DNA of 64,000 bases, from positions 59,272,001 to 59,336,000 of the forward strand of contig NC_042999.1 of assembly GCF_006345805.1 (NCBI RefSeq), read 5' to 3'. Source of the DNA: Octopus sinensis (Eukaryota). This document shows positions 976 to 64,000 of this stretch, one piece after another; positions within the stretch are counted from its first letter, which is position 1; every line of letters starts with the position of its first letter. The translations under genes and the position numbers were made by a program. The notes under the pieces are model-generated. The model ran no database searches, was not told the DNA's origin, and saw only the letters and a program-made list of their open reading frames with translations.

Positions 976-1656
976 GTTTCTTTATTAGCCACACAGGGCT
1001 GCACACAGATAGAACAAATTACAAGGTAGAGCTTTTCTTTTGAAGGTTTAAAAAAAAAAAAAAATAATAATAATAATAAAATAAAAAATAAAATAAAATA
1101 AAAAAGGGGGGGTCGATCAAAAGGGATCGTAAAAGGAGAGAAAGAGGACAAAAAAAGGGGGGGGGGTTAAAAAAAAAAAGGGGGAGAGGAAAAAAAATTT
1201 GATCAATAGGGATCGTTATCACAGAAATGTCAATATGAAGTGTAAAGGGGAGGACAGGTGAGGTTTACCCGTGGAAAGAAAAGCCTACGGAAAAGACCAC
1301 GGTAACCTCGGTCAATGAAGTCACATGTTATATTTCTTTTTTTTTTTTGCAAATAAGCAACTCTCTGTATTAATTTTTACGGTTCATAGAATCATAGTCA
1401 AGGTGGCTTCGTCATTCATACGTGCCATCCTTGCTACATTCACCCATCTTTTTTTAAAACATTCACTAGACAAAACTTGCCTCTCTACTCTCACTTTTTT
1501 CTTCAAGTGATACTTGAAGAAGTTGATGAGAGATTGACCAGAGAGGAAAGTGTTTGTCTCTAATCCTTTCAGACGCGTCCACCAGATACATTCTTTTGCC
1601 ATAGCCACAAGTATGATAAAAATAGCTCTTCCTTCCCGTTTGAAGGAAGGAGGCGT
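976..1656 (-). mobile_element. 5'-truncated Tx1/L1-clade LINE 3' fragment flanked by (GATA)n
   Basis: ORF 1384..1608 (AMAKECIWWTRLKG...GQSLINFFKYHLKKKVRVERQVLS...RW) aligns by eye with the C-terminus of the element at 55107..55520 (AILKETVWKTCVRG...GQGLVNFFSYHLSNKIRLEKRYLS...RW). The 3' end is agcc-ctgtgt-ggct plus aataaagaaac. (GATA)n lies at 954-974 and 1657-1746. Confidence 0.8.
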
Positions 1657-3026: not shown

Positions 3027-3255
3027 TATTTCTTTATTGCCCACAAGGGGATAAACATAGAGGGGACAAACAAGGACAGACAAAGGGGTTAAGTCGATTA
3101 CATCGACCTCAGTGCGTAACTGGTACTTAATTTATCGACCCCGAAAGGATGAAAGGCAAATTCGACCTCGGCGGAATTTGAACTCGGAACGTAGCGACAG
3201 ACGAAATACTGCTAAGCATTTCGCCCGGCGTTCTAACGTTTCTGCCAGCTCGCCG
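3027..3255 (-). mobile_element. SINE B with 12-bp TSD
   Basis: TSD ggcacaattaca at 3015-3026 and 3256-3267. Body is homologous to the copies at 43065, 49426 and 63851. Confidence 0.92.
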
Positions 3256-5861
3256 GGCACAATTACAACTACACAGACATTATTGTGCTACGTCCAGGCA
3301 TACACGTTACCACTCTTGCATAACTGCGTGACATCTACTAAACTACCCCAACTACGCAGTCAGTTTTACACAGTTGATTATATACTGCCATTAGCAACTA
3401 CGCTGCCGCTTTACAAATCACTAAGTACAGTCAGAACTGTGCGCTAACTTGAGGACTCTTGCGTCGCTTCGTCGAATAAGAATTTGTGCAAGACACAGAT
3501 GTGTGATGCTTTTCAAATCTGCAGAAACCCCTATACCACCTCTGTGCAGCGTCAACCTGAAGATCTCCAATTGGGTCCTGTACTTATTCTCTATATTTAC
3601 TATTAATGATGCCAGTGTCTTGATTTTTATTCCCTATATTTACTAGTAATGATGCTAGTGTCTTGATTTTCTGAATAACCAGCACGATGATAATATTACT
3701 ATATTAGGCATGACTGGTGCAGAGCAAGTACCTTTCTCTGGTCCTTCAAACTTGTATTGGTCTGGAGTAATAGGTGTCACGAGTGTAGTAGTTAGCAGGA
3801 TGCAGAACTTTTATGAAGATACCTTCTCTTAGATCAGCATCTAAAGAGCTGTTTGTGAGTGACCTACTTCCTGAGACAATTCGGTGACATACTAAATACT
3901 CCATAGTTGACACCCTGCTATTCCATCTAGATCAGAGTAGACCCGATGAGAATTGGGGCTAAGAGGTGACACCACGCTCACCCAAAAGCTGGAATGTTTG
4001 AACCAAGGCTTTAAAAGCCATCCAGCACTTATTTACTTTTTTACAGTCACATTCAGGATAACTGCTACACCACTTAATAGACACCCACTTTGCATAGCCA
4101 TTCTCACACAAGCACAGATAGATTTCTTGCACATTTCTATTAACAGAAAGCCGCTGCTATACATATACGGTGACTGATACCTAATGCATTCTGACCTAAA
4201 TAAGTTTGTTTCTACCATAAATAACATTATTGTAATCTGCCTTCTTAATGTCCAATGGGGTCAATCTAAGTTTAATGTAACTGGGACTCTGGACATATCA
4301 CATTCCATTACTATCTCCACAATCTTTTGATCATATCTCTTATATTCTCTCAACGAATGATATCTTAGAAATTTATCTTTGATACCAGAAACTTCAGTTC
4401 GCTTCATCCATCCGTATGGGCAAACACATTGGAAAAGGCTACATCAGAATGTCAATAATTGCTTCAGAATTTGTACTGTAATTGATTTAAGACAAATCGA
4501 TCAGATGCACAGAACTATCACATTTAAGAACCCAAGTATCCTAATATTCTTATACTGCAGAAACGCCTGTCGGAACTTAATATGCAATAACAAATTTTTA
4601 TTAAATAAGTTTCAATGATGTATCATTCTCCATACTTCATTACGTTGTCTCTCTCTCTCTTTCCTTCTATCCTTCTCTCTCCCTCTCTCTTTCCGTCTCT
4701 CCTCCCCCCTCTCTCTCTATATAAATATATGAATACATATGTATATATACATACACACACTTACGCACACACATATATGTGTGTGTATGAGTAATTATTG
4801 GATAATAAAATAAGTGGTTTACACCTGGTTGCTTACTGGTTAAGCGCAGTCACAACCACTAAGAATTTTTAATTTTAAACCTCTCTTTGTGACTATTATC
4901 TTATTCCTTTTCATTATTTGAAATTCCTATTTCTGGACATAGTCTATTTTATTCTGTTCTTCGGTTTACTCGCTTTTCACAATTTTTTTCTTCTATTTAA
5001 CTATTTTCTTCTATCTAACTATTGTTCATATTATATTTCCACTAAAGTCAACCCCCATTGGCAACCAATTTAACCCCTTTACATTTTTTACAAAATTATT
5101 GTTGCAATTAGATGGAGATGCTTGTTCATTGGCCTGTATAGATTATATTATATATTCTCACATAAGTTTAGCTATTCAGTATTATCATAAATGTCTGATG
5201 AACCTCTAAGTAACAGATTGTGAAGATTTTTTTTTCAGCTTTAATAAAATATTATATGTAAATATGTATAGACACGCACTCACATATTGTCAGCATCTTA
5301 AGTAAAGCAAGCTGAAATATATTACTTGGGTGGCATGGTGTCTTACGAATGTAATGTAAGATTTTAGTAGATATATATTCTCAGGAAAAAGAGAAGCGAA
5401 TGTTTGTGTAGTGAAGGGTGGATGTACTAAAATTGAACGAAATGTTTGCTGAGTAAGAGAGGGGGTAGTAATAAAATAAAATATTACTTATTTTGAATGA
5501 CTGATATTGGATGAAATATTAGCTGTAGTGAAGTGACTATGGAATATCTGTTTGTTCAAAAACAAATGAAAAATGTCTGTAAAGATAAGATGTTTATTTC
5601 TAGATGCTTATTGTGATAAAGGAAATATTTCTTTAGAATATATCTCAATACATGGTGTATAATCCTATTTATGATGAAGTTGCACTTATAACCTGGGCCA
5701 ATGTTATATTTAAAATTACAGTTATGTAAGCAACTAAGTTTAGAGTGGGGGAATATTTGCACGTATGCAATAAAGTCGTTATTTTCAGTATATAGCATGA
5801 ATTATATAACGTACATAGAACTATCTGAACTTACTGCAATGTAATTTGTTTTAGTATATAC

Positions 5862-11068: not shown

Positions 11069-11092
11069 TAATAATGATAATGATAAATGATA

Positions 11093-12083
11093 AATGATAA
11101 ATGGCAAGAAAACCCTCTCTATGGCAAATACCCAAAGAGAGCAAATAATGCAGATATTGACAAAGCCCTGACCCATCAATGGCTAATGGCCTCTGGCTTA
11201 AAATCTGAAACAGAGGGGTTTATCATAGCAGCTCAAGATCAATGCCTACCAACAAGAAACTACCAGGCCAACATATTAAAGATCAGAAGCAGTCCAACGT
11301 GTCGTGTATGCCAGCAACAAAATGAAACCATTGACCATGTGGTCTCCAAGTGCAGTCTTCTAGCGCCTACAGAGTATCTCAACAGACACGATAGAACTGC
11401 ACAATATATTCACTGGGTAATCTGCAAAAACCTGGATTTGCCCCATGAAAAAAACTGGTGGGAACACAAACCACCCCCAGTGCTTGAAAATGACCACATC
11501 TCACTCCTCTGGAACTTCACCATTCAAACTGACAGAAAGATAGATGCAAATAGGCCAGACATCATATTGAAAGACTTCAAACAAAGAACATGCCTCCTCA
11601 TTGATATGACTGTCCCAATCGATATAAACGTATCTGTCAAGACCTACCAAAAACTGAGTAAATATAAAGATCTTGAAATAGAAATCAGCAAAATGTGGAA
11701 CCTGAAGTCTAAAACAATACCTGTTGTCATAGGTGCCCTGGGAATGATAGCAAAAGGGGCTGATAGCTACCTAACTCAGATACCAGGAAACCCAAAAATG
11801 GCAGAAATTCAAAAGATAGTGCTCATGGGAACTGCTCATATCCTACGCAAAAAAACTTTCTATGTAATCTCAAGGTTTAAAACAAACATAATTTTCGGTT
11901 TAAAGGGAGAGGGAAAAGAAAAAAATTTTTTTTTTTTAGACATTCATTAGTACAACCCCCCCCCCCAAATATATGGCACACTAGGCATAACAACAACATG
12001 AACTTCCAACCTGTTGTCTCTTGAGGTCTCTGGGTGAGACTTGGAGCCAACTTGTACAAATATAAAGCAAAACTCAAACATAG
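11093..12083 (+). mobile_element. 5'-truncated R4/Dong-clade LINE (zinc finger plus restriction-like endonuclease) inserted in (AAT)n
   Basis: ORF 11087..11950: EGFIIAAQDQ, CRVC..NETIDHVVSKC, RHD, RPDII..LIDMTVP, KYKDL, TIPVVIGALG. (AAT)n lies on both flanks. Confidence 0.9.
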
Positions 12084-30939: not shown

Positions 30940-31108
30940 CGTACACACACATATATACGACGGGCTTCTTTCAGTTTCCGTCTACCAAATCCACTCATAA
31001 GGCTTTGGTCGACCCGAGGCAGAAGACACTCGCCCAAGGTGTCACGCAGTGGGACTTGAACAATGTGGTTGGTAAGCAAGCTACTTACCACACAGCCACT
31101 CCTGCGCC
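30673..31108 (-). mobile_element. SINE A, full length
   Basis: Complete reverse-complement copy ending gccactcctgcgcc. Confidence 0.95.
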
Positions 31109-32700: not shown

Positions 32701-32805
32701 AACTGCACAAATTTTATTATCGTGATATGACTTTTTTAATTTTGTGATTACAAAAATTACAACACAAAGGTGCAGGAGTGGCTGTGTGGTAAGGAGCTTG
32801 CTTCC

Positions 32806-34242
32806 GTGCATGCGTCACTCAGGGTGCACTTGGTTTGGCGTTTGTGTGCGAGGTTTTTTTTTGGGGTGATGTACAATATATATATATTTTTTGGGGTGAT
32901 GTACTCAGGGGTGATGTACTCAGACTTTAGCCTGCCTGAGTTGTCTTCAGCAGAGGAGGAGCTGGTAAGAGCGGTCATAAAGATGGACGGAGTGTTGGAG
33001 AAGACAAGAAGTTTTGCTGAAGCCACGGAGATGAAGCGAAGGGTGTTGGATTTGGCTGGCCTGAAGATGTATGAGATAATGGTACAGAAGGTGGGAGGTG
33101 ACGTGAGGATGTCGCTCCCCCCAAGGCATTATGGAGCGGATGGAGAGAAAACCGATCACCTATAAGGTGTTCTCGTTAAAAGGAAAAAAGGCCGAGCAGG
33201 TGGAAACTGAAACAGAAAAGACGCTAAGGGAGCGGTCAAAGAAAATAATATACATAACTAAAGGAAGGAGATATGGAACAATGGTCGTCCAATTTAGGAC
33301 AGTAGATGAGGCGAAGAGGCTGGCGAGTGTGGCGGTGAAAACAGAGGAAGTAGTGCTTCTGCCCACATACCTTGGAAGATGAGGGTAGAAGCAATCCCAC
33401 CTGATATAGAGGTGGCTTGGGCGGCGGCGGCTGTCCTTGTTGGAAGTGAGGAGAAAGTGGCTGTCCTTCAAGCCACAGAAACAGAAGAAGGAGGGTGGAA
33501 AGGGAAGACACTAGAATTAAATATACAGACGGAGGACAACTGGAGAGTTTGGAAGAAACGGTGACATTGGGGAAGATTGTGCTGAGAGTGTGGGTAGAAT
33601 GCAGAGTACCACATTGTTTCAAATGTGGCCAAAAGGGCCACATTAGAGCATACTGCCCTCTACAGAGGACAATAGCAGAGGAAACAGTTGTGGAGACGGA
33701 ATAGAAAAGAGAAGAAAAGAAAGACGGAGGAAAGGAGGAACAGGAGGAACAATGGAGAGTAATAGAGAGTAGAAGGAAGAGAAAAAAGAAAGAACAGTGA
33801 GTATGACGTGGTACCCCAATCAACTCCATCCCACCCAAGACCAATCGGACCTACTCTCCCCATACAGACACCAAACCCACCCACCCCGTTTCCCCACAGG
33901 AAAAAAGAGCATATAGCTCAGAATTTAGAAGAACTCTCTCCCGGTGGAAAAGGTTACGAGAGAGTGCAGTCATGGAACGATAGTGGAACTGGAACAGAGA
34001 CTAAAAGGAAATTAGTACTCAGAGGCGGCAAGTTGTGTTGCTCAGTGTTGGGTGATTAGCATACTCTTCATATTTTCAACTATCACGCATGTTAACATTA
34101 TTTTAATTTGTTTTTCATGTTCATTTTCATGTTTCATTCATAATATTATGTTTCATTTTTATATGTTTTTAATGTTATATGTCCCCACATGTGTTGTAGT
34201 GCCCCCTGTATGTAATGCCTTTATGGAAGAAATATTGAAATA
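32806..34242 (+). mobile_element. Non-autonomous ORF1-only non-LTR element with a Tx1-like 3' end
   Basis: Imperfect 15-bp TSD aaggagcttgcttcc (32791-32805) / aagaaacttgcttac (34243-34257). No RT motifs found. 3' end tgtaatgcctttatggaagaaatattgaaata. Confidence 0.85.
32869..33800 (+). pseudogene. ORF1/gag-like nucleic-acid-binding protein with a CCHC zinc knuckle (frameshifted)
   Basis: Consecutive ORF pieces 32770..33165, 33131..33382, 33379..33564 and 33495..33704. CFKCGQKGHIRAYC (CX2CX4HX4C) at 33615-33656, then an E/K-rich stretch and WRVIESRRKRKK. Confidence 0.85.
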
Positions 34243-35123
34243 AAGAAACTTGCTTACCAATCACATAGTTCCGGGTTCAGTCCCACTGCGTGGCACCTTG
34301 GGCAAGTGTCTTCTACTACAGCCTTGGGCTGACCAAAGCTTTGTGAGTGGAGTTGGTAGACGGAAACAGAAGGAAGCCCATTGTATATATATCGTGGAGT
34401 AATTCATTCATGAAGAAATGATTTGTACGTTCTGTCATATATTAAGCATGAATCGTTTAAATGTAGAAGGAGTGAGAGTGAAGGAACAATGAAATATTTT
34501 CACCTGAATACTGTGAAGTAATTATATCGAAAGCAAAGTGGGAACTGGAAGGTAGCAACATGTCGAAATACCACTCATCGTATGTGTGTGTGTGTATGCA
34601 TTTGTGTGTCTGTGCTTGCCTCCCCCCCAACATCGCTTGACAACCGATGTTGGTGTATTTACGTCCCCGTAACTTAGCGTTTTGGCAAAGAGTAGGAAAG
34701 GATAAGTACTAGGCTTGTAAAGAATAAGTCCTGGAGTCCATTTTTTCGGCTAAAAGGTGGTACTCCGTCATGGCCCTAGTCAAAAGACTGAAGTAAAAGA
34801 ATAAAAGAATATTCTTATTGGCATTATTCATCTTCATTCGTTTGAATTTGATTGTTTTATACTTCAACTTCATGGGAACAAGATGATGCTGTAGTTACCA
34901 CTGGATGTAGGTCATGAAAGCAGTTGAGAGCTGATTTTATGATCATGCAACCTGCAAGAAATAGCAGTTGTATATACCACAAATCAAACCATACAAGATG
35001 TGCCGACACCGTTTTCCTCCTAACGAGAAAAAGTTACGTCTGTGTAGTGATGAAAAGTAATATTTATTTATAGAACTAATACTCAGTTCGTTCTAGAGTT
35101 AGTTCTTTGTTAGTTCTACCATA

Positions 35124-43064: not shown

Positions 43065-43297
43065 TATTTCTTTACTACCCACAAGGGGCTAAACACAGAG
43101 TGGAAAAAACAAGGACAGACAAACGGATTAAGTCGATTATATCGACCCCAGTGCGTAACTGGTACTTAATTTATCGACCTCGAAAGGATGAAAGGTAAAG
43201 TCAACCTCGGCGGAATTTGAACTCAGAACGTAACGGCAGACGAAATACCACTAAATATTTCGCCCGGCCTGGTAACGATTCTGCCAGCTCGCCGCCC
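43065..43297 (-). mobile_element. SINE B with 17-bp TSD
   Basis: TSD tgtatgctgtaaatacc at 43048-43064 and 43298-43314. Confidence 0.95.
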
Positions 43298-49344: not shown

Positions 49345-49715
49345 ACCCCTGGCAGGATTGGAGCAACGTAAAATGAATTAACTTGCCCAAGGAAACAGTG
49401 CACGGTTTAGACCAGAAACTGAACTAAGGCGGCGACCTGGCAGAAACGTTTACACTGCGGGTGAAATGCTTTGCAGTATTTCGTCTGCCGCTATGTTCTG
49501 AGTTCAAATTCCGCCGAGGTCGACTTTGCCTTTCATCCCTTCGGGGTTGATAAATTAAGTACCAGTTACGCACTGAGGACGATGTGATCGACTTAATCCC
49601 TTTGTTTGTCCTTGTTTGTCCCTTCCATGTTTAGCCCCTTGTGGGCAATAAAGAAATAAGAAACTAAACCCAGTACCTAACAAGCCTGACACCAACTGCT
49701 TAACCACAATGAGAC
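49345..49715 (-). mobile_element. Old CORE-type SINE fragment interrupted by SINE B
   Basis: Minus strand: tgtggttaagc...gggtt|agtttctgg...ccttgggcaagtt...ttgctccaatcc. Confidence 0.6.
49426..49658 (+). mobile_element. SINE B with about 11-bp TSD
   Basis: agaaactgaac (49414-24) / agaaactaaac (49659-69). Confidence 0.92.
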
Positions 49716-54645: not shown

Positions 54646-54711
<66 letters not shown>

Positions 54712-54852
54712 CAACGGGCTTCTTTCTGTTTCCGTCTAACAAATCCACTCACAAGGCTTTGGTCGGCCCGAGGCTATAGTAGAAGACACTTGTCCAAGGT
54801 GCCACAAAGTGGGACTTAACGCGGGACCATGTGGTTCGTAAGCAAGCTACTT

Positions 54853-57218
54853 TATTTCATAAATATTTGCCATGAAGGCATTACAAAGAGGGGACGAACA
54901 AGAACAGACAAACATAAAAGGGTGAAGTAGCTGTAGCGATTAAATATTTACAATTTAAAATTAACAATAATTTGATAAATATGTTTATAACTTTTGACTT
55001 AAGCGTTGCTCATTACAAATGAAATTTGTAATGGTTTCTCTGAAGGATAGGCATCCGACCATCAGGGTAGACCCCTTGCTTTTTCTTTCCTGTATTTGGC
55101 TTCCACTTACCTGGTGCAAAACACTCCCAGCTTCCTCGCCACAGGCTTCCATCTTCTCATGAATCTGTCTCGTGACAGGTACCTTTTCTCCAGCCTGATC
55201 TTATTACTGAGGTGGTAACTAAAAAAGTTAACCAATCCCTGGCCGTATATAAAGGCACCCGACACTATGCCTCTCACACACGTCTTCCATACTGTTTCTT
55301 TCAGTATGGCTACTATGCAGAAAAAGCAAGACTTCCTTTCCCTGTTAGGGGAAGGGGGAGGCACAATCTCGATGATAGATTCAGCTGATAGCTGTACTCT
55401 TCGCATCGATGACAACAGTTGCTTTACGAAAACTATCAGTCCCGTTAATTCCGGACACTCCACAAATGCGTGCAGGACGGTTTCCCTGTCCTGCCCGCAC
55501 CTCGGACATGTCTGTGCCATGACAGTTTATCACGAGCAGGTAACGCCGCACGGAAGCACTGCCAAGCCAGAGATTTTTGGTAATTGTCCAGATACCCCGG
55601 CCCGAAAGTTCTCCGGAACATGTTGATTAACTGATTTTCATCGTAGCCCATGGTCTCTCCTAAGGCCTCATCGGACTTAACCTCCACTAACCCGCTATAG
55701 AAATCCGCGGTGGAACTCTTGTTGCCGGCATTGCCCGCCTGAAAGAGTAGCTGAAGTGCCTGGCGGCACTCCAACTGCCAGTCCTCCAGCCTAGGTCTCT
55801 GCTTGATCCAATTACCAATGTCTGTTAAGGACGTTAATTGCGGAAGGTAGAACTGAACGTGCGGTGACCACACCAGCTCTCCATCCAGGTAAAGCTAGAG
55901 GTGCCTCAACCTTAACGCGAATTTTCGCATCCTCAGCCAAGGCATCCCTAGCCCACTCTTTAGCGGTTTCTGGCAGCTGACAGAGCGCTTCACGAGTGGT
56001 TTTCCTCCCTTCCACAAAAAGTGGAAAAGGATTCTCTCCAAATTGTTCAGCCACAAATCGGGGCAAGGTGATAACCGATGCTATAAACATCTGCACCACC
56101 TCCGCCTTTCCTGGCAAGGATAACACCCGCCCAGACCAGGTCTGGGTTAAAGCAATCACCTTGCTGGCCACCTCACCCCAATTTTTCTCTATCTGGAGGT
56201 CTGGCTCGAACCAGACTCCGAGCAGCTTAACAGGACCTTCCGTTCAACGCCCCACGACGTTATTGGACGGCATCGGCTTGCTCCTCCAAGTGCCGAGCTG
56301 CAAACCAATTGACTTGTCCTTGTTAACCTTTGCTTCTGCCACTGCCTCGTAACTTGTGATAGCTTCTTCTACCACTGGAAGCTGGCCTTCATCCGCTACG
56401 ATGATGGATATGTCATCTGCGTACGCCATAGCTCCTCTTCCACACCATAGATCATGCAGTGCGCCCCCTAGTGCCTCCAACCTCCGCAATAATGGCTTGA
56501 GAGCCAGTATATACAAAAGCGGGGACAGGGGATACCCCTCACGCACTGAGCGCTCGATCCTGAATGGCTTCGAAAGGAAACCATTCATTTTTACGACGGA
56601 CTCGATGTCGCTGTACAACGCAGCAAACCATCCCCGGAAGGACCGCCGCCAAGTACTGATGGTCGACCCTATCGAATGCCTTAGACTGGTCTAAATGTAC
56701 CAGTGCCCCCCCCCCCCTGCGCCTGAAAGCTTCCCCACCCTCTCTAAGGAGTAGCGTATACGGTGGAGATGGTCATGAATCGTCCTACCCGGGATAGCGC
56801 ACGTTTGCGTTTCCCCGACAAGTTTGTCCACGACCCGCGCCAAACTTTTTGCTAACACCTTGGCCATAATCTTTAACTCTGTGTTCAACAGAGTTATGGG
56901 CCTCAAGTTCCCTATCTCGTCCCCCTTGCTCGAGTCCTTCCTGATCAACGTCACCATCCCACGGCTCGCAGATTGGGAATTCCCCCATTCTGCTGCCAAG
57001 TGGCGTAGACGCTGGCCAGCAAGTGCCCGAACAAGTCTGGCATAGTTTTGTAGAATTCATAAGGCAGACCATCGAGACCCGGTGACTTCTCCCCGGGGCA
57101 TTCGCCCAGTACCTCGATTACCTCCGCGGCCGTGATTGGTCCTTCACAGCACTCAGCTTCGCGTGCCGAGAGACGCAGGCCGCAAGACAGGAAGTCCCTA
57201 AGGGCAGGAAGTCCCTAA
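54853..57218 (-). mobile_element. 5'-truncated Tx1/L1-clade LINE: ORF2 RT and zinc-finger region (frameshifted) plus 3' UTR
   Basis: KSPGLDGLPYEFY (about 57050-57092), NLRPITLLNTELKIMAKVLA, LDQSKAFDRVDH, SVREGYPLSPLLY, YADD (56412-56423), LQLGTW, CPRCGQDRETVLHAFVEC. GC-richer than the flanks. 3' UTR 54853-55106. Confidence 0.93.
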
Positions 57219-57534
57219 TTCGTAAAATTAACCTACGTTCAAGTTACGAATTACAATTTTGTTTTCAATTTTGTTTACAATAATGTTTTCTTTTGACACA
57301 TTCTACCAGTATACGAAGTTTCAAATTGTTTAGTTGAGTAGAAAATTCCGTCTATCAAACGGAAAAGATCCTTCTTTCATTCTCTCAAAAAGCTCGGAGA
57401 TCTCCGTTTCAATTATATTTTTTGAAGACACAGCGGCTACTGCCGCGAACTTTTTTGCTGCCTCATGCAGCTGGTTCTCTTCTTGAATTATTTCGACCGA
57501 CATATTCATTCGAAATAAATGAAACAAAATTCAA

Positions 57535-57950
57535 TCCCAGAAAAGGGAAACCTATCATTTTTTTACTTTTTTCCCCCTCTTAACGAGGACAACAGTTCAA
57601 ATCCCACCCCTGCTGGGGGGTGAGACGTAACAACAAAGCCTGCAACGTTCGAAATTAATTATTTTTTCACACAATAATATAATATAGAATTCCCAAAAAC
57701 GGGAAACCTATAATATTTTTTCCTCACAACGAGGACAACAGTCCAAATCTCGCCCACGCTAGTGGCGGATGCCACAATAGAGCCTACAACGGCTAAAATT
57801 TAAATTTTTTTTCGCAATAATAAATTGTTTATCCCGAAAAACGGGGAACCTATAATATTTTTTTCCTCTTCATGAGGATAACAGTTCAAATGCCGCCCCC
57901 GCTGGAGTGGGGGACACGACAATAAAGCCCATAACAGCTTTAATAAGTTC
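57535..57950. repeat. Three diverged tandem units of about 145-155 bp
   Basis: Anchors aacctat at about 57549, 57705 and 57847; a(c/t)gagga(c/t)aacagt at about 57583, 57729 and 57872. Confidence 0.85.
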
Positions 57951-58394
57951 AATATTAATAATTTTAATATTTCAACAATTACTTTCTCCCATCACCGGGA
58001 AAAAGCACAAAAATTTTCAAAGTTCACGAAAATATTCAACAATAAACATTCAACAGTAGAAAAATTATCCACGTGCAACTAACCGCCAAAAATATAGGTC
58101 CATCTACGACACGCTACTTACCACACAGCTGCTCCTACGCCTAGTAAAATTTTGTTATATCTTATACATCGATTCTTAAACTACGCCCCGCAAGAAATTC
58201 TAGTTGCATACTGAGTTAAAAAAGAATAATAATAATTAAAACTTTCGGAAATCCCTGTGTGAGAGGTTGTTTGAAATCGTATTATTTATGATTTTATTAT
58301 AGAGACGTGTGATTAAACAAATTAGGAAAGAATAGTTACTATATTTTTCTTCTGAATTTTACCTTTAAATCAAATCTTTATTATTACCAAAATT

Positions 58395-63850: not shown

Positions 63851-64000
63851 AAGGCGGCGAGCTGGCAGAAACGTTAGCACGCCGGACAAAATGCGTAGCT
63901 GTATTTCGTATGTCGCTACGTTGTGAGTTCAAATTCCGCCGAGGTCGACTATGCCTTTCATCCTTTCGGGGTCGATAAATTAAGTACCAGTTATGCCTTG
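63851..64000 (+). mobile_element. SINE B, cut by the window end
   Basis: aaggcggcgagctggcagaaacgttagcacgccgg...gataaattaagtaccag. Confidence 0.92.

What the first reader, a model, noticed from the sequence alone, without database searches (positions are those of the whole stretch)
54841..58141. Tx1-clade LINE that appears to target one exact nucleotide in the tRNA-like head of the dominant SINE
Seen: intact SINE A heads read ...gtgtggt|aagtagcttgcttaccaacc (31060-31108, 20214). The RT-encoding LINE at 54853-57218 (-) ends ...tgtaatgccttcatggcaaatatttatgaaata and is joined directly to aagtagcttgcttacgaacc. The missing 5' SINE piece reappears 3.26 kb away (58113-58141) with a 5-7 bp TSD (gctactt). 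A second, independent insertion at 32806-34242 ends ...tgtaatgcctttatggaagaaatattgaaata and is joined to aagaaacttgcttacc, the same junction position just 3' of the A box. Established: the Tx1 clade contains sequence-specific families (Xenopus Tx1/Tx2 into DNA transposons, Keno into U2 snRNA, Dewa into tRNA arrays, Kibi and Koshi into microsatellites). Inference: this is a sequence-specific retrotransposon using a high-copy SINE as a safe-harbour target. Insertion between the A and B boxes would also disable that SINE copy's Pol III promoter. I do not know of a described SINE-head-targeting family in molluscs, but cannot confirm novelty.
Basis: partly seen in the sequence, partly recalled or inferred. 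Interest (0 to 1): 0.9.

Follow-up and report, generated by a model that had tools for sequence, protein, structure and literature searches.

The report
LINE lineage that inserts into a SINE head
An old L1/Tx1-type jumping gene in an octopus-like genome, and a shortened ORF1-only derivative of it, have repeatedly landed at the same spot inside the promoter-bearing head of the genome's commonest short repeat, a new target for an already known kind of site-specific element.

Summary
Two SINE A copies in the window are split at the same place, GGT|AAG just 3' of box A. Both inserts end in ...GAAATA. Their target-site duplications differ (7 bp and about 15 bp), and so do their bodies. The 54853-57218 insert is a frameshifted, 5'-truncated RT plus zinc-finger ORF2. 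The 32806-34242 insert is an ORF1-only "half-LINE" that shares only the 3' tail.

The one further copy of this lineage that I could retrieve with a 3' end (Logan contig L009) also joins the SINE A head at that site. Ka/Ks of 0.35 against the window copy indicates it came from a different source element. So lineage X is 3 of 3 in SINE A. The sister lineage Y and its partner SINE B, which share the tail family, are 0 of 7.

The preference is therefore real and belongs to the lineage. The sample is only three. A 6-8 bp nick motif would be enough to produce it. The exact nick is uncertain by 0-7 nt because of AAG microhomology.

Tx1 membership could not be tested. The RT is L1-like, relatives carry an APE endonuclease, and ORF1 has a CCHC knuckle.

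Verdict: a new member, with a new target class, of the known target-specific L1/Tx1 kind. Moderately interesting.

The parts
54853..57218 (-). Lineage-X LINE copy (insert 1, recognisable part). It carries the RT domain, a C-terminal zf-RVT zinc finger and a 254-nt 3' UTR. It is 5'-truncated with no endonuclease part, and has at least 5 frameshifts and 2 in-frame stops.
   Evidence: Frames. The stitched 704-aa ORF2 hits Pfam RVT_1 at 9e-21 and zf-RVT at 2e-6. The best PDB hit is human L1 ORF2p at 1e-28, against R2 at 1e-13. tblastn with P0001 and P0005 covers 55137-57202.
54853..54912 (-). Conserved 3' tail of lineage X, ending ...TGTAATGCCTTCATGGCAAATATTTATGAAATA-3'. It belongs to a tail family shared with lineage Y and SINE B.
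   Evidence: Alignment A1. The exact 16-mer TGTAATGCCTTYATGG occurs only here and in insert 2.
57219..58112 (.). Unexplained 894-bp 5' segment of insert 1. It includes three tandem monomers of about 145 bp (57533-57940). A 14-nt duplication, CAGGAAGTCCCTAA (57188-57201 and 57205-57218), sits at the LINE truncation point.
   Evidence: Repeats. No blastn or tblastx similarity to insert 2, to relatives or to the rest of the window. It is enclosed by the same split SINE A and TSD.
54705..54852 (-). 3' part of the target SINE A copy (SINE position 27 to the end). The 3' TSD copy AAGTAGC is at 54846-54852.
58113..58142 (-). 5' head piece of the same SINE A copy, containing box A. The 5' TSD copy AAGTAGC is at 58113-58119.
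32806..34242 (+). Insert 2, an ORF1-only 'half-LINE' of 1437 bp. It has a frameshifted ORF1 (about 32920-34059) with a CCHC knuckle at 33612-33659, then a 3' UTR ending in the lineage-X tail (34183-34242). There is no ORF2.
   Evidence: Frames. zf-CCHC at 1e-4. BLASTP against the ORF1 of the Argonauta hians relative in L002 gives E=7e-21, 30% identity over 192 aa. Only the tail resembles insert 1.
32766..32805 (+). 5' head piece of the second target SINE A copy. The 5' TSD copy AAGGAGCTTGCTTCC is at 32791-32805.
34243..34390 (+). 3' part of the second target SINE A copy (position 27 to the end). The 3' TSD copy AAGAAACTTGCTTACC is at 34243-34258.
976..1656 (-). Comparison element: a 5'-truncated copy of sister lineage Y, ending ...GGCTAATAAAGAAAC. 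It lies inside a (TATC)n microsatellite and not in SINE A.
   Evidence: tblastn with P0001 gives 65% identity. Sequence.
3027..3256 (-). Comparison element: a SINE B copy whose roughly 55-nt 3' tail belongs to the same tail family, of the Y type. Its TSD is TGTAATTGTGC(C), which is not SINE A. Other full copies are at 43066-43294 (-) and 49430-49657 (+), with TSDs GGTATTTACAGCATACA and AGAAACTgAAC.

Best explanation
Lineage X is a sublineage of an octopod L1/Tx1-superfamily LINE. This superfamily has an ORF1 with a CCHC knuckle and an ORF2 made of APE endonuclease, RT and a zinc finger. Its 3' tail is sequence-defined and is not poly(A).

Proposed mechanism: lineage X inserts by target-primed reverse transcription at one preferred site in the tRNA-like head of SINE A. 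The element-encoded endonuclease is inferred to nick the bottom strand at 5'-...GCTACTT^ACCACAC-3'. On the top strand this is GGT|AAG, at the boundary of the D arm and the anticodon arm, between box A and box B. Reverse transcription starts on the ...GAAAUA-3' tail. The top strand is cut 7 to about 16 nt downstream, which gives TSDs of variable length that share their left edge. An ORF1-only derivative carrying the same tail is mobilised in trans and so lands at the same site.

Shown here:
- the three junctions;
- the TSDs;
- the independence of the events;
- the contrast with the sister lineage;
- the domain content of the elements.

Inferred, not shown:
- that the endonuclease, rather than RNA-target annealing, sets the site;
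- how long the recognised sequence is;
- that insertion inactivates the SINE's Pol III promoter;
- that the SINE serves as a harmless landing place.
For: - Two split SINE A copies in the window have the 3' junction at SINE position 27. Their TSDs are 7 and about 15 bp, both in the same orientation as the SINE.
- The insert bodies are unrelated except for the tail. One is RT plus zinc finger. The other is an ORF1 homologous to the ORF1 of a full-length relative.
- A third junction was found without reference to the SINE. L009, from Logan SRR11869391, is 73% identical in nucleotides to insert 1 and ends ...TTTATGAAATA|AAGAAGAAGCTTGCTTCTCAACCACATG.
- Ka/Ks between insert 1 and L009 is 0.35 over 322 codons, with dS 0.59. 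The two therefore diverged largely as functional lineages and are not orthologous dead copies.
- The sister lineage Y and SINE B share the tail family (A1) but sit in non-SINE-A sequence in 7 of 7 cases. Three of 3 against 0 of 7 gives a Fisher probability of 1/120.
- The TSD-defined ends of SINE B (…GAAATA) align with the terminal GAAATA of X, which fixes the junction at GAAATA|AAG.
- Full-length relatives carry an APE domain (Pfam column).
- Tx1-group elements are known to be target-specific for other repeats (PMC4494074).
Against: - There are only three junctions. No genome-wide sample could be obtained.
- The endonuclease of lineage X itself was not seen, because all three copies are 5'-truncated or cut by a contig end.
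- A 6-8 bp motif would suffice, so recognition of the SINE as such is not established.
- The junctions of insert 2 (AAGAAAC) and L009 (an extra AAG) can also be parsed as tail-derived AAAGAAA. That would spread the nicks over about 7 nt.
- 894 bp at the 5' side of insert 1 is unexplained.
- All copies are old and dead, so current activity is unknown.
Confidence: 0.75

Rival explanations
1. The endonuclease has only a short nick-site preference of about 6-8 bp around GGT|AAG. SINE A is hit simply because it carries most genomic copies of that motif, with no recognition of a longer SINE-specific sequence.
For: In the window GGTAAG occurs 20 times, 12 of them in SINE A. TGGTAAGT occurs 5 times, all in SINE A. 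With three junctions, a motif whose sites are 60-100% in SINE A is fully compatible.
Against: This differs from the main explanation only in degree. No non-SINE insertion of lineage X has been seen. Described target-specific L1/Tx1 families behave in the same operational way (PMC4494074 uses a criterion of more than 20% of flanks).
Confidence: 0.2
2. The junctions are not independent. Either one ancestral LINE-in-SINE event was later copied by segmental duplication or orthology, or the LINE carries the SINE A 3' part along by 3' transduction.
For: All three have the same orientation and nearly the same junction. The 5' side of L009 is not available.
Against: - TSD lengths differ (7 against about 15 bp), the bodies are unrelated, and the outer flanks differ.
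- Both window inserts have the matching SINE head with an overlapping TSD on their 5' side, which 3' transduction does not predict.
- Ka/Ks of 0.35 between insert 1 and L009 argues against orthologous pseudogenes.
- There are no shared derived substitutions in the flanking SINE pieces.
Confidence: 0.03
3. Chance, or a structure-driven hotspot. The palindrome GGTAAG...CTTACC in the SINE head is fragile and attracts any insertion, with no lineage-specific targeting.
For: The site lies in a 6-bp inverted repeat that folds as a hairpin.
Against: - The probability of two further random hits at the same site and orientation is about (7e-5)^2.
- No other element splits a SINE A copy in the window.
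- Lineage Y and SINE B, which use related machinery, are 0 of 7 at this site.
Confidence: 0.02

Closest known systems
Target-specific Tx1-group LINEs that nest in other transposons: Xenopus Tx1L in the DNA transposon Tx1D, crocodilian Tx1-Mar in Mariner-N4_AMi, and Tx1-8_Crp and Tx1-4_AMi in LTR elements (PMC4494074)
   Same: - An APE-type L1-superfamily LINE whose copies sit at one position of a high-copy interspersed repeat.
- TSDs of variable length.
- Non-autonomous passengers share the target, as SINEU-3 does with Tx1-Mar and as the ORF1-only element does here.
   Different: - The target is the head of a tRNA-derived SINE, between box A and box B, rather than a DNA or LTR transposon. I found no described case.
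- The host is a cephalopod.
- Clade membership is not verified.
- Only three junctions are known, against hundreds in the published cases.
Tx1-group LINEs targeting small-RNA genes: Keno (U2 snRNA), Mutsu (5S rRNA), Dewa (spacer of tRNA-Leu) (PMC3706591; PMC4494074)
   Same: The target is a multicopy Pol III or snRNA-type sequence. The logic is that of a harmless multicopy landing site.
   Different: Here the target is a retroposed tRNA-like SINE head dispersed through the genome. It is not a functional tandem gene family. Dewa inserts in a spacer, not inside the tRNA-like body.
HAL1 'half-L1' elements of mammals (from my own knowledge: Bao and Jurka 2010)
   Same: Insert 2 keeps ORF1 and the LINE 3' end and lacks ORF2, so it must use ORF2 protein supplied in trans.
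   Different: It belongs to a different LINE lineage with a sequence-defined tail. Only one copy was seen, so family status is unproven and it could be a single internally deleted copy.
Stringent-type LINE/SINE partnerships that share a 3' tail (the Okada model; PMC3747384, PMC4176376)
   Same: SINE B, lineage Y and lineage X share a tail of about 55 nt ending (A)AGAAATA.
   Different: RNAalifold found no conserved tail stem-loop. Recognition of the tail is inferred only from its conservation.

Membership tests
Tx1 clade (L1 superfamily) of non-LTR retrotransposons | The RT domain groups phylogenetically with Tx1 reference elements rather than with L1 proper or other clades. | not testable with these tools
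   No named Tx1 reference sequence was available. The homologues carry no clade names. The only evidence is that the best solved structure is human L1 ORF2p (1e-28) rather than R2 (1e-13). O. vulgaris repeat annotation lists L1-Tx1 as its only L1-type group among recently active LINEs (PMC13282606).
Tx1 clade (L1 superfamily) of non-LTR retrotransposons | An APE-type (Exo_endo_phos) endonuclease lies N-terminal to the RT. | tested here: inconclusive
   It is absent from the window copy, which is 5'-truncated at 57218. It is present in the nearest full-length relatives: the L002 ORF hits PF03372 at 4e-12, and P0005-P0015 carry it. No lineage-X copy with its 5' half was found.
Tx1 clade (L1 superfamily) of non-LTR retrotransposons | A C-terminal Cys/His zinc finger follows the RT, and ORF1 is of type I (RRM/CCHC). 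| tested here: met
   zf-RVT at 2e-6 in the stitched ORF2. A CCHC knuckle is present in the ORF1 of insert 2 and of L002. Type I variants are described as consistent with Tx1 (PMC5203782). An RRM was not detected by Pfam.
Target-specific non-LTR retrotransposon (operational criterion of PMC4494074: the same sequence in more than 20% of flanks) | The same target sequence, position and orientation recur at independent insertions. | tested here: met
   3 of 3 lineage-X 3' junctions are at SINE A position 27. Independence is supported by the TSDs and by Ka/Ks. With n=3 the true fraction is poorly bounded.
R2/R4/Dong-type site-specific LINEs (restriction-like endonuclease) | An RT of the R2 group with a C-terminal PD-(D/E)XK endonuclease and no APE domain. 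| tested here: not met
   The RT is closer to L1 than to R2, and relatives have an N-terminal APE.
tRNA-derived SINE (SINE2), for the target SINE A | A head with tRNA-like cloverleaf and box A and box B at tRNA spacing. | tested here: inconclusive
   Default ARAGORN and the Rfam tRNA model give nothing. Relaxed ARAGORN (-ps60) draws a degenerate 74-nt cloverleaf with anticodon GCT on the consensus. Box A-like TGGCTGTGTGG and box B-like GGTTCAGTCCC are visible in the sequence.
Half-LINE (HAL1-like) non-autonomous element, for insert 2 | ORF1 plus the LINE 3' end with no ORF2, present as a multi-copy family. | tested here: inconclusive
   The structure is met. Only one copy was seen, so family status is untested.

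The most novel reading that the evidence does not exclude
A long-lived LINE lineage (dS of about 0.6 between copies that use the same site) has specialised on the Pol III promoter region of the genome's dominant SINE. It splits box A from box B at each insertion. It therefore both uses the SINE as a safe harbour and inactivates SINE copies. It also supports its own ORF1-only parasite that inherits the same targeting. This would be the first described SINE-head-specific LINE, and a case of a LINE preying on a SINE family that another LINE mobilises.
Probability: 0.45. Interest if true: 0.6.

Novelty: new member of a known kind. Interest (0 to 1): 0.5.

Why it matters
Target-specific L1/Tx1 elements are natural examples of APE-type endonucleases retuned to long, defined DNA sites. 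Each new target adds a data point for how that specificity evolves and for engineering site-directed insertion.

A SINE head as target would be a new class. The landing site is itself a retroposon with hundreds of thousands of copies, so target supply is almost unlimited. Each hit also separates the two halves of a Pol III promoter.

Sister lineage Y shares the tail family but shows no such preference. That gives a natural pair for mapping the responsible endonuclease residues.

For cephalopod genomics, this explains one class of nested SINE/LINE structures in genomes that are very rich in repeats.

Tried and rejected
1. An exact-pattern scan of metagenome contigs with TGTAATGCCTTYATGGN{6,16}GAAATA gave 4 bacterial chance hits.
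2. The third homologue search used a concatenated query (ORF1 + C-terminus + P0080 + P0081, joined by runs of X). It returned nothing, not even its own components, so the candidate cap was evidently filled by spurious words. That search was wasted.
3. Exact look-ups of 20 window ORFs or start variants found none in the protein collection. The window's own genome could therefore not be sampled elsewhere.
4. Cluster names and accession searches gave no organism or clade names.
5. Scans of viral contigs and genome contigs with a SINE A 22-mer gave nothing, or a chance hit in a 67%-GC MAG.
6. The large ENA contigs holding 40-47% identical relatives (L010, L011/L012) contain no SINE A or SINE B, so they are useless for junction counts.
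7. RNAalifold found no consensus structure in the shared tail. A small hairpin I saw by eye is not supported, and I dropped it.
8. The 894-bp 5' segment of insert 1 had no blastn or tblastx similarity to anything held.
9. I considered and rejected the idea that the SINE A body is the LINE's own 3' end, or an RNA-level SINE-LINE chimera. Both window inserts have SINE sequence on both sides with overlapping TSDs.
Full report
**What is in the window**

The window is rich in repeats and looks octopod. The nearest named protein relatives are from Argonauta hians.

A roughly 165-bp SINE, here called SINE A, gives 13 BLAST segments. Its head reads GGCGCAGGAGTGGCTGTGTGGT AAGTAGCTTGCTTACCAACCACATGGTTCCGGGTTCAGTCCC. 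It contains a box A-like and a box B-like motif.

Default ARAGORN and Rfam do not call the head a tRNA. Relaxed ARAGORN draws a degenerate cloverleaf on the consensus. In that cloverleaf the site of interest lies at the boundary of the D arm and the anticodon arm.

Only two SINE A copies are split. In both, the 3' piece starts at SINE position 27 (alignment).

**Insert 1 (54853-58112, minus strand)**

The part from 54853 to 57218 is a LINE ORF2 remnant. After stitching across at least five frameshifts it gives 704 aa with RVT_1 and a C-terminal zf-RVT finger. Its best solved-structure match is human L1 ORF2p at 1e-28. R2 proteins score 1e-13.

The copy is 5'-truncated before any endonuclease domain. 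The 3' UTR is 254 nt and ends ...TGTAATGCCTTCATGGCAAATATTTATGAAATA.

The remaining 894 bp (57219-58112) contain three tandem monomers of about 145 bp, and a 14-nt duplication sits at the truncation point. This segment resembles nothing else I hold, so it stays unexplained.

The whole 3260 bp is bounded by the two halves of one SINE A copy, with a 7-bp TSD, AAGTAGC.

**Insert 2 (32806-34242, plus strand)**

This insert shares only the last 35 nt or so with insert 1. It encodes a frameshifted ORF1 with a CCHC knuckle.

That ORF is homologous to the ORF1 of a near-full-length relative in Argonauta hians (L002), with E=7e-21. L002 also carries an APE domain, the RT and the finger.

Insert 2 is therefore an ORF1-only derivative with the lineage-X tail. 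It is bounded by a second SINE A copy. Its TSD is about 15 bp, AAGGAGCTTGCTT-CC against AAGAAACTTGCTTACC.

**Relatives and the tail family**

tblastn found a third LINE 3' fragment in the window, at 976-1656 on the minus strand. It belongs to a sister lineage, Y, and is 65% identical to P0001. It lies in a (TATC)n microsatellite.

A second SINE, here called SINE B, has three full copies. Its last 55 nt or so match the same tail family. Its TSDs are ordinary unique sequence: TGTAATTGTGCC, GGTATTTACAGCATACA and AGAAACTgAAC.

Lineage-Y 3' ends from other samples (L003, and two in L002) are also not in SINE A.

The TSD-defined end of SINE B is ...GAAATA. In alignment A1 it lines up with the terminal GAAATA of the X copies. 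This supports placing the X junction at GAAATA|AAG.

**An independent test**

A search with only the ORF2 C-terminus returned two lineage-X proteins. One contig, L008, stops before the 3' end.

The other, L009, comes from Logan run SRR11869391 and is 73% identical in nucleotides to insert 1. It ends ...GTTGCCAATTTATGAAATA and is followed by AAGAAGAAGCTTGCTTCTCAACCACATGCTTCC. That is the SINE A head from the same place, with one extra AAG.

Ka/Ks between insert 1 and L009 is 0.35 over 322 codons, with dS 0.59. For two orthologous dead copies it should be near 1. The two copies therefore derive from different source elements, and the lineage kept this site over a long period.

The tally is X 3 of 3 in SINE A at one site and one orientation, and Y with SINE B 0 of 7. 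The Fisher probability is 1/120.

**How it most likely works**

The pattern is a fixed left edge with a variable right edge of the TSD. Target-primed reverse transcription gives exactly this when the first, bottom-strand nick is sequence-directed and the second nick is loose.

- The inferred first nick is 5'-...GCTACTT^ACCACAC-3' on the bottom strand, a T^A step as for L1 endonuclease.
- The ORF1-only element lands at the same place because it borrows the same ORF2 protein through the shared tail.
- The sister lineage has a related tail but no such preference. The determinant is therefore more likely the lineage-X protein, presumably its APE domain, than the tail.

All of this is inference, because no X endonuclease sequence was recovered.

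**Limits**

1. There are only three junctions.
2. The 8-mer TGGT|AAGT occurs in this window only in SINE A, and the 6-mer GGT|AAG is 60% in SINE A. A short recognition motif would therefore look the same as recognition of the SINE.
3. The AAGAAAC of insert 2 and the AAG-AAGAAGC of L009 can also be read as tail-like AAAGAAA. That would spread the nicks over up to 7 nt, so 'one exact nucleotide' is the simplest reading and not the only one.
4. Tx1 membership could not be tested for lack of named references. What is shown is L1-superfamily affinity, an APE domain in relatives, a CCHC ORF1, and a target-specific habit. All are typical of the Tx1 group (PMC4494074, PMC5203782, PMC3747384).

**Comparison with what is known, and novelty**

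Tx1-group families are known to target:
- DNA transposons (Tx1D, Mariner-N4_AMi);
- LTR elements;
- U2, U5 and 5S genes;
- a tRNA-Leu spacer (Dewa);
- microsatellites.

O. vulgaris is reported to hold 13 recently active L1-Tx1 families, with no mention of targeting. Full-text searches, including searches for the sequences themselves, found no description of a LINE that targets a SINE head.

This is best filed as a new member, with a new target class, of a known kind. It is moderately interesting, and a genome-wide flank count could easily confirm or refute it.

Noticed in passing
window 3027-3256 (-), 43066-43294 (-), 49430-49657 (+), partial 63855-63996; compare 976-1035 (-), L003:1952-2011, L002:6590-6649: SINE B is about 230 bp with its own tRNA-like head. 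It shares a 3' tail of about 55 nt (…TTTGTCTGTCCTTGTTTGTCCC.TCT.TGT…CCCTTGTGGGCAATAAAGAAATA) with the lineage-Y LINE. This looks like a classic SINE/LINE partner pair. Its TSDs are 11-17 bp of unique sequence.
   Followed up: partly
window 976-1656 (-); L003:2011 onward: The lineage-Y copy in the window sits inside a (TATC)n microsatellite, and the L003 copy is followed by a long (ATT)n run. This may be a microsatellite preference of lineage Y, or a tail repeat. Two other Y ends, in L002, are in plain AT-rich sequence.
   Followed up: partly
window 57219-58112: There are 894 bp of unknown origin between the truncated LINE and the SINE head. They include three tandem monomers of about 145 bp (57533-57940), each with a box B-like GTTCAAATCC motif on the plus strand. 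The segment could be a 5' UTR promoter array, a captured sequence or a later insertion.
   Followed up: partly
window 57188-57218: A perfect 14-nt direct duplication, CAGGAAGTCCCTAA, lies 3 nt apart exactly at the 5' truncation point of the LINE. This is possibly a template-jump or microhomology scar.
   Followed up: no
L009:1331-1345: The junction in L009 reads GAAATA-AAG-AAG-AAGC, with one extra AAG relative to SINE A. This suggests slippage or annealing of a read-through AAG during priming.
   Followed up: no
window 3257-3275 (- strand, 5' flank of SINE B copy 1): The sequence upstream of this SINE B insertion, CTGTGTAGT|TGTAA, resembles the SINE A site CTGTGTGGT|AAGTA in 8 of 9 bases upstream of the nick. 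It may be coincidence or a hint of upstream recognition by this LINE group.
   Followed up: no
window SINE A heads, e.g. 31091-31073 (-): The target lies in a 6-bp inverted repeat, GGTAAG-TAGCTTG-CTTACC, that can form a hairpin or cruciform. The nick falls inside the left arm.
   Followed up: partly
L011/L012 (ENA ERZ25071366 ctg14421c): A full-length relative, 40% identical, with ORF1 of 732 aa and ORF2 of 1143 aa, is present as a perfect head-to-tail tandem array with a period of 6484 bp. The contig's name ends in 'c', which may mean circular. It could be a real tandem array, as target-specific LINEs often form, or an assembly artefact.
   Followed up: partly
window 11087-11950 (+): An intact 287-aa ORF is the C-terminal part of a different non-LTR retrotransposon. 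It has a marginal zf-RVT match, followed by a PD...D...K-like motif that I saw by eye. It may belong to the Dong/R4-type LINEs reported as highly active in octopus.
   Followed up: partly
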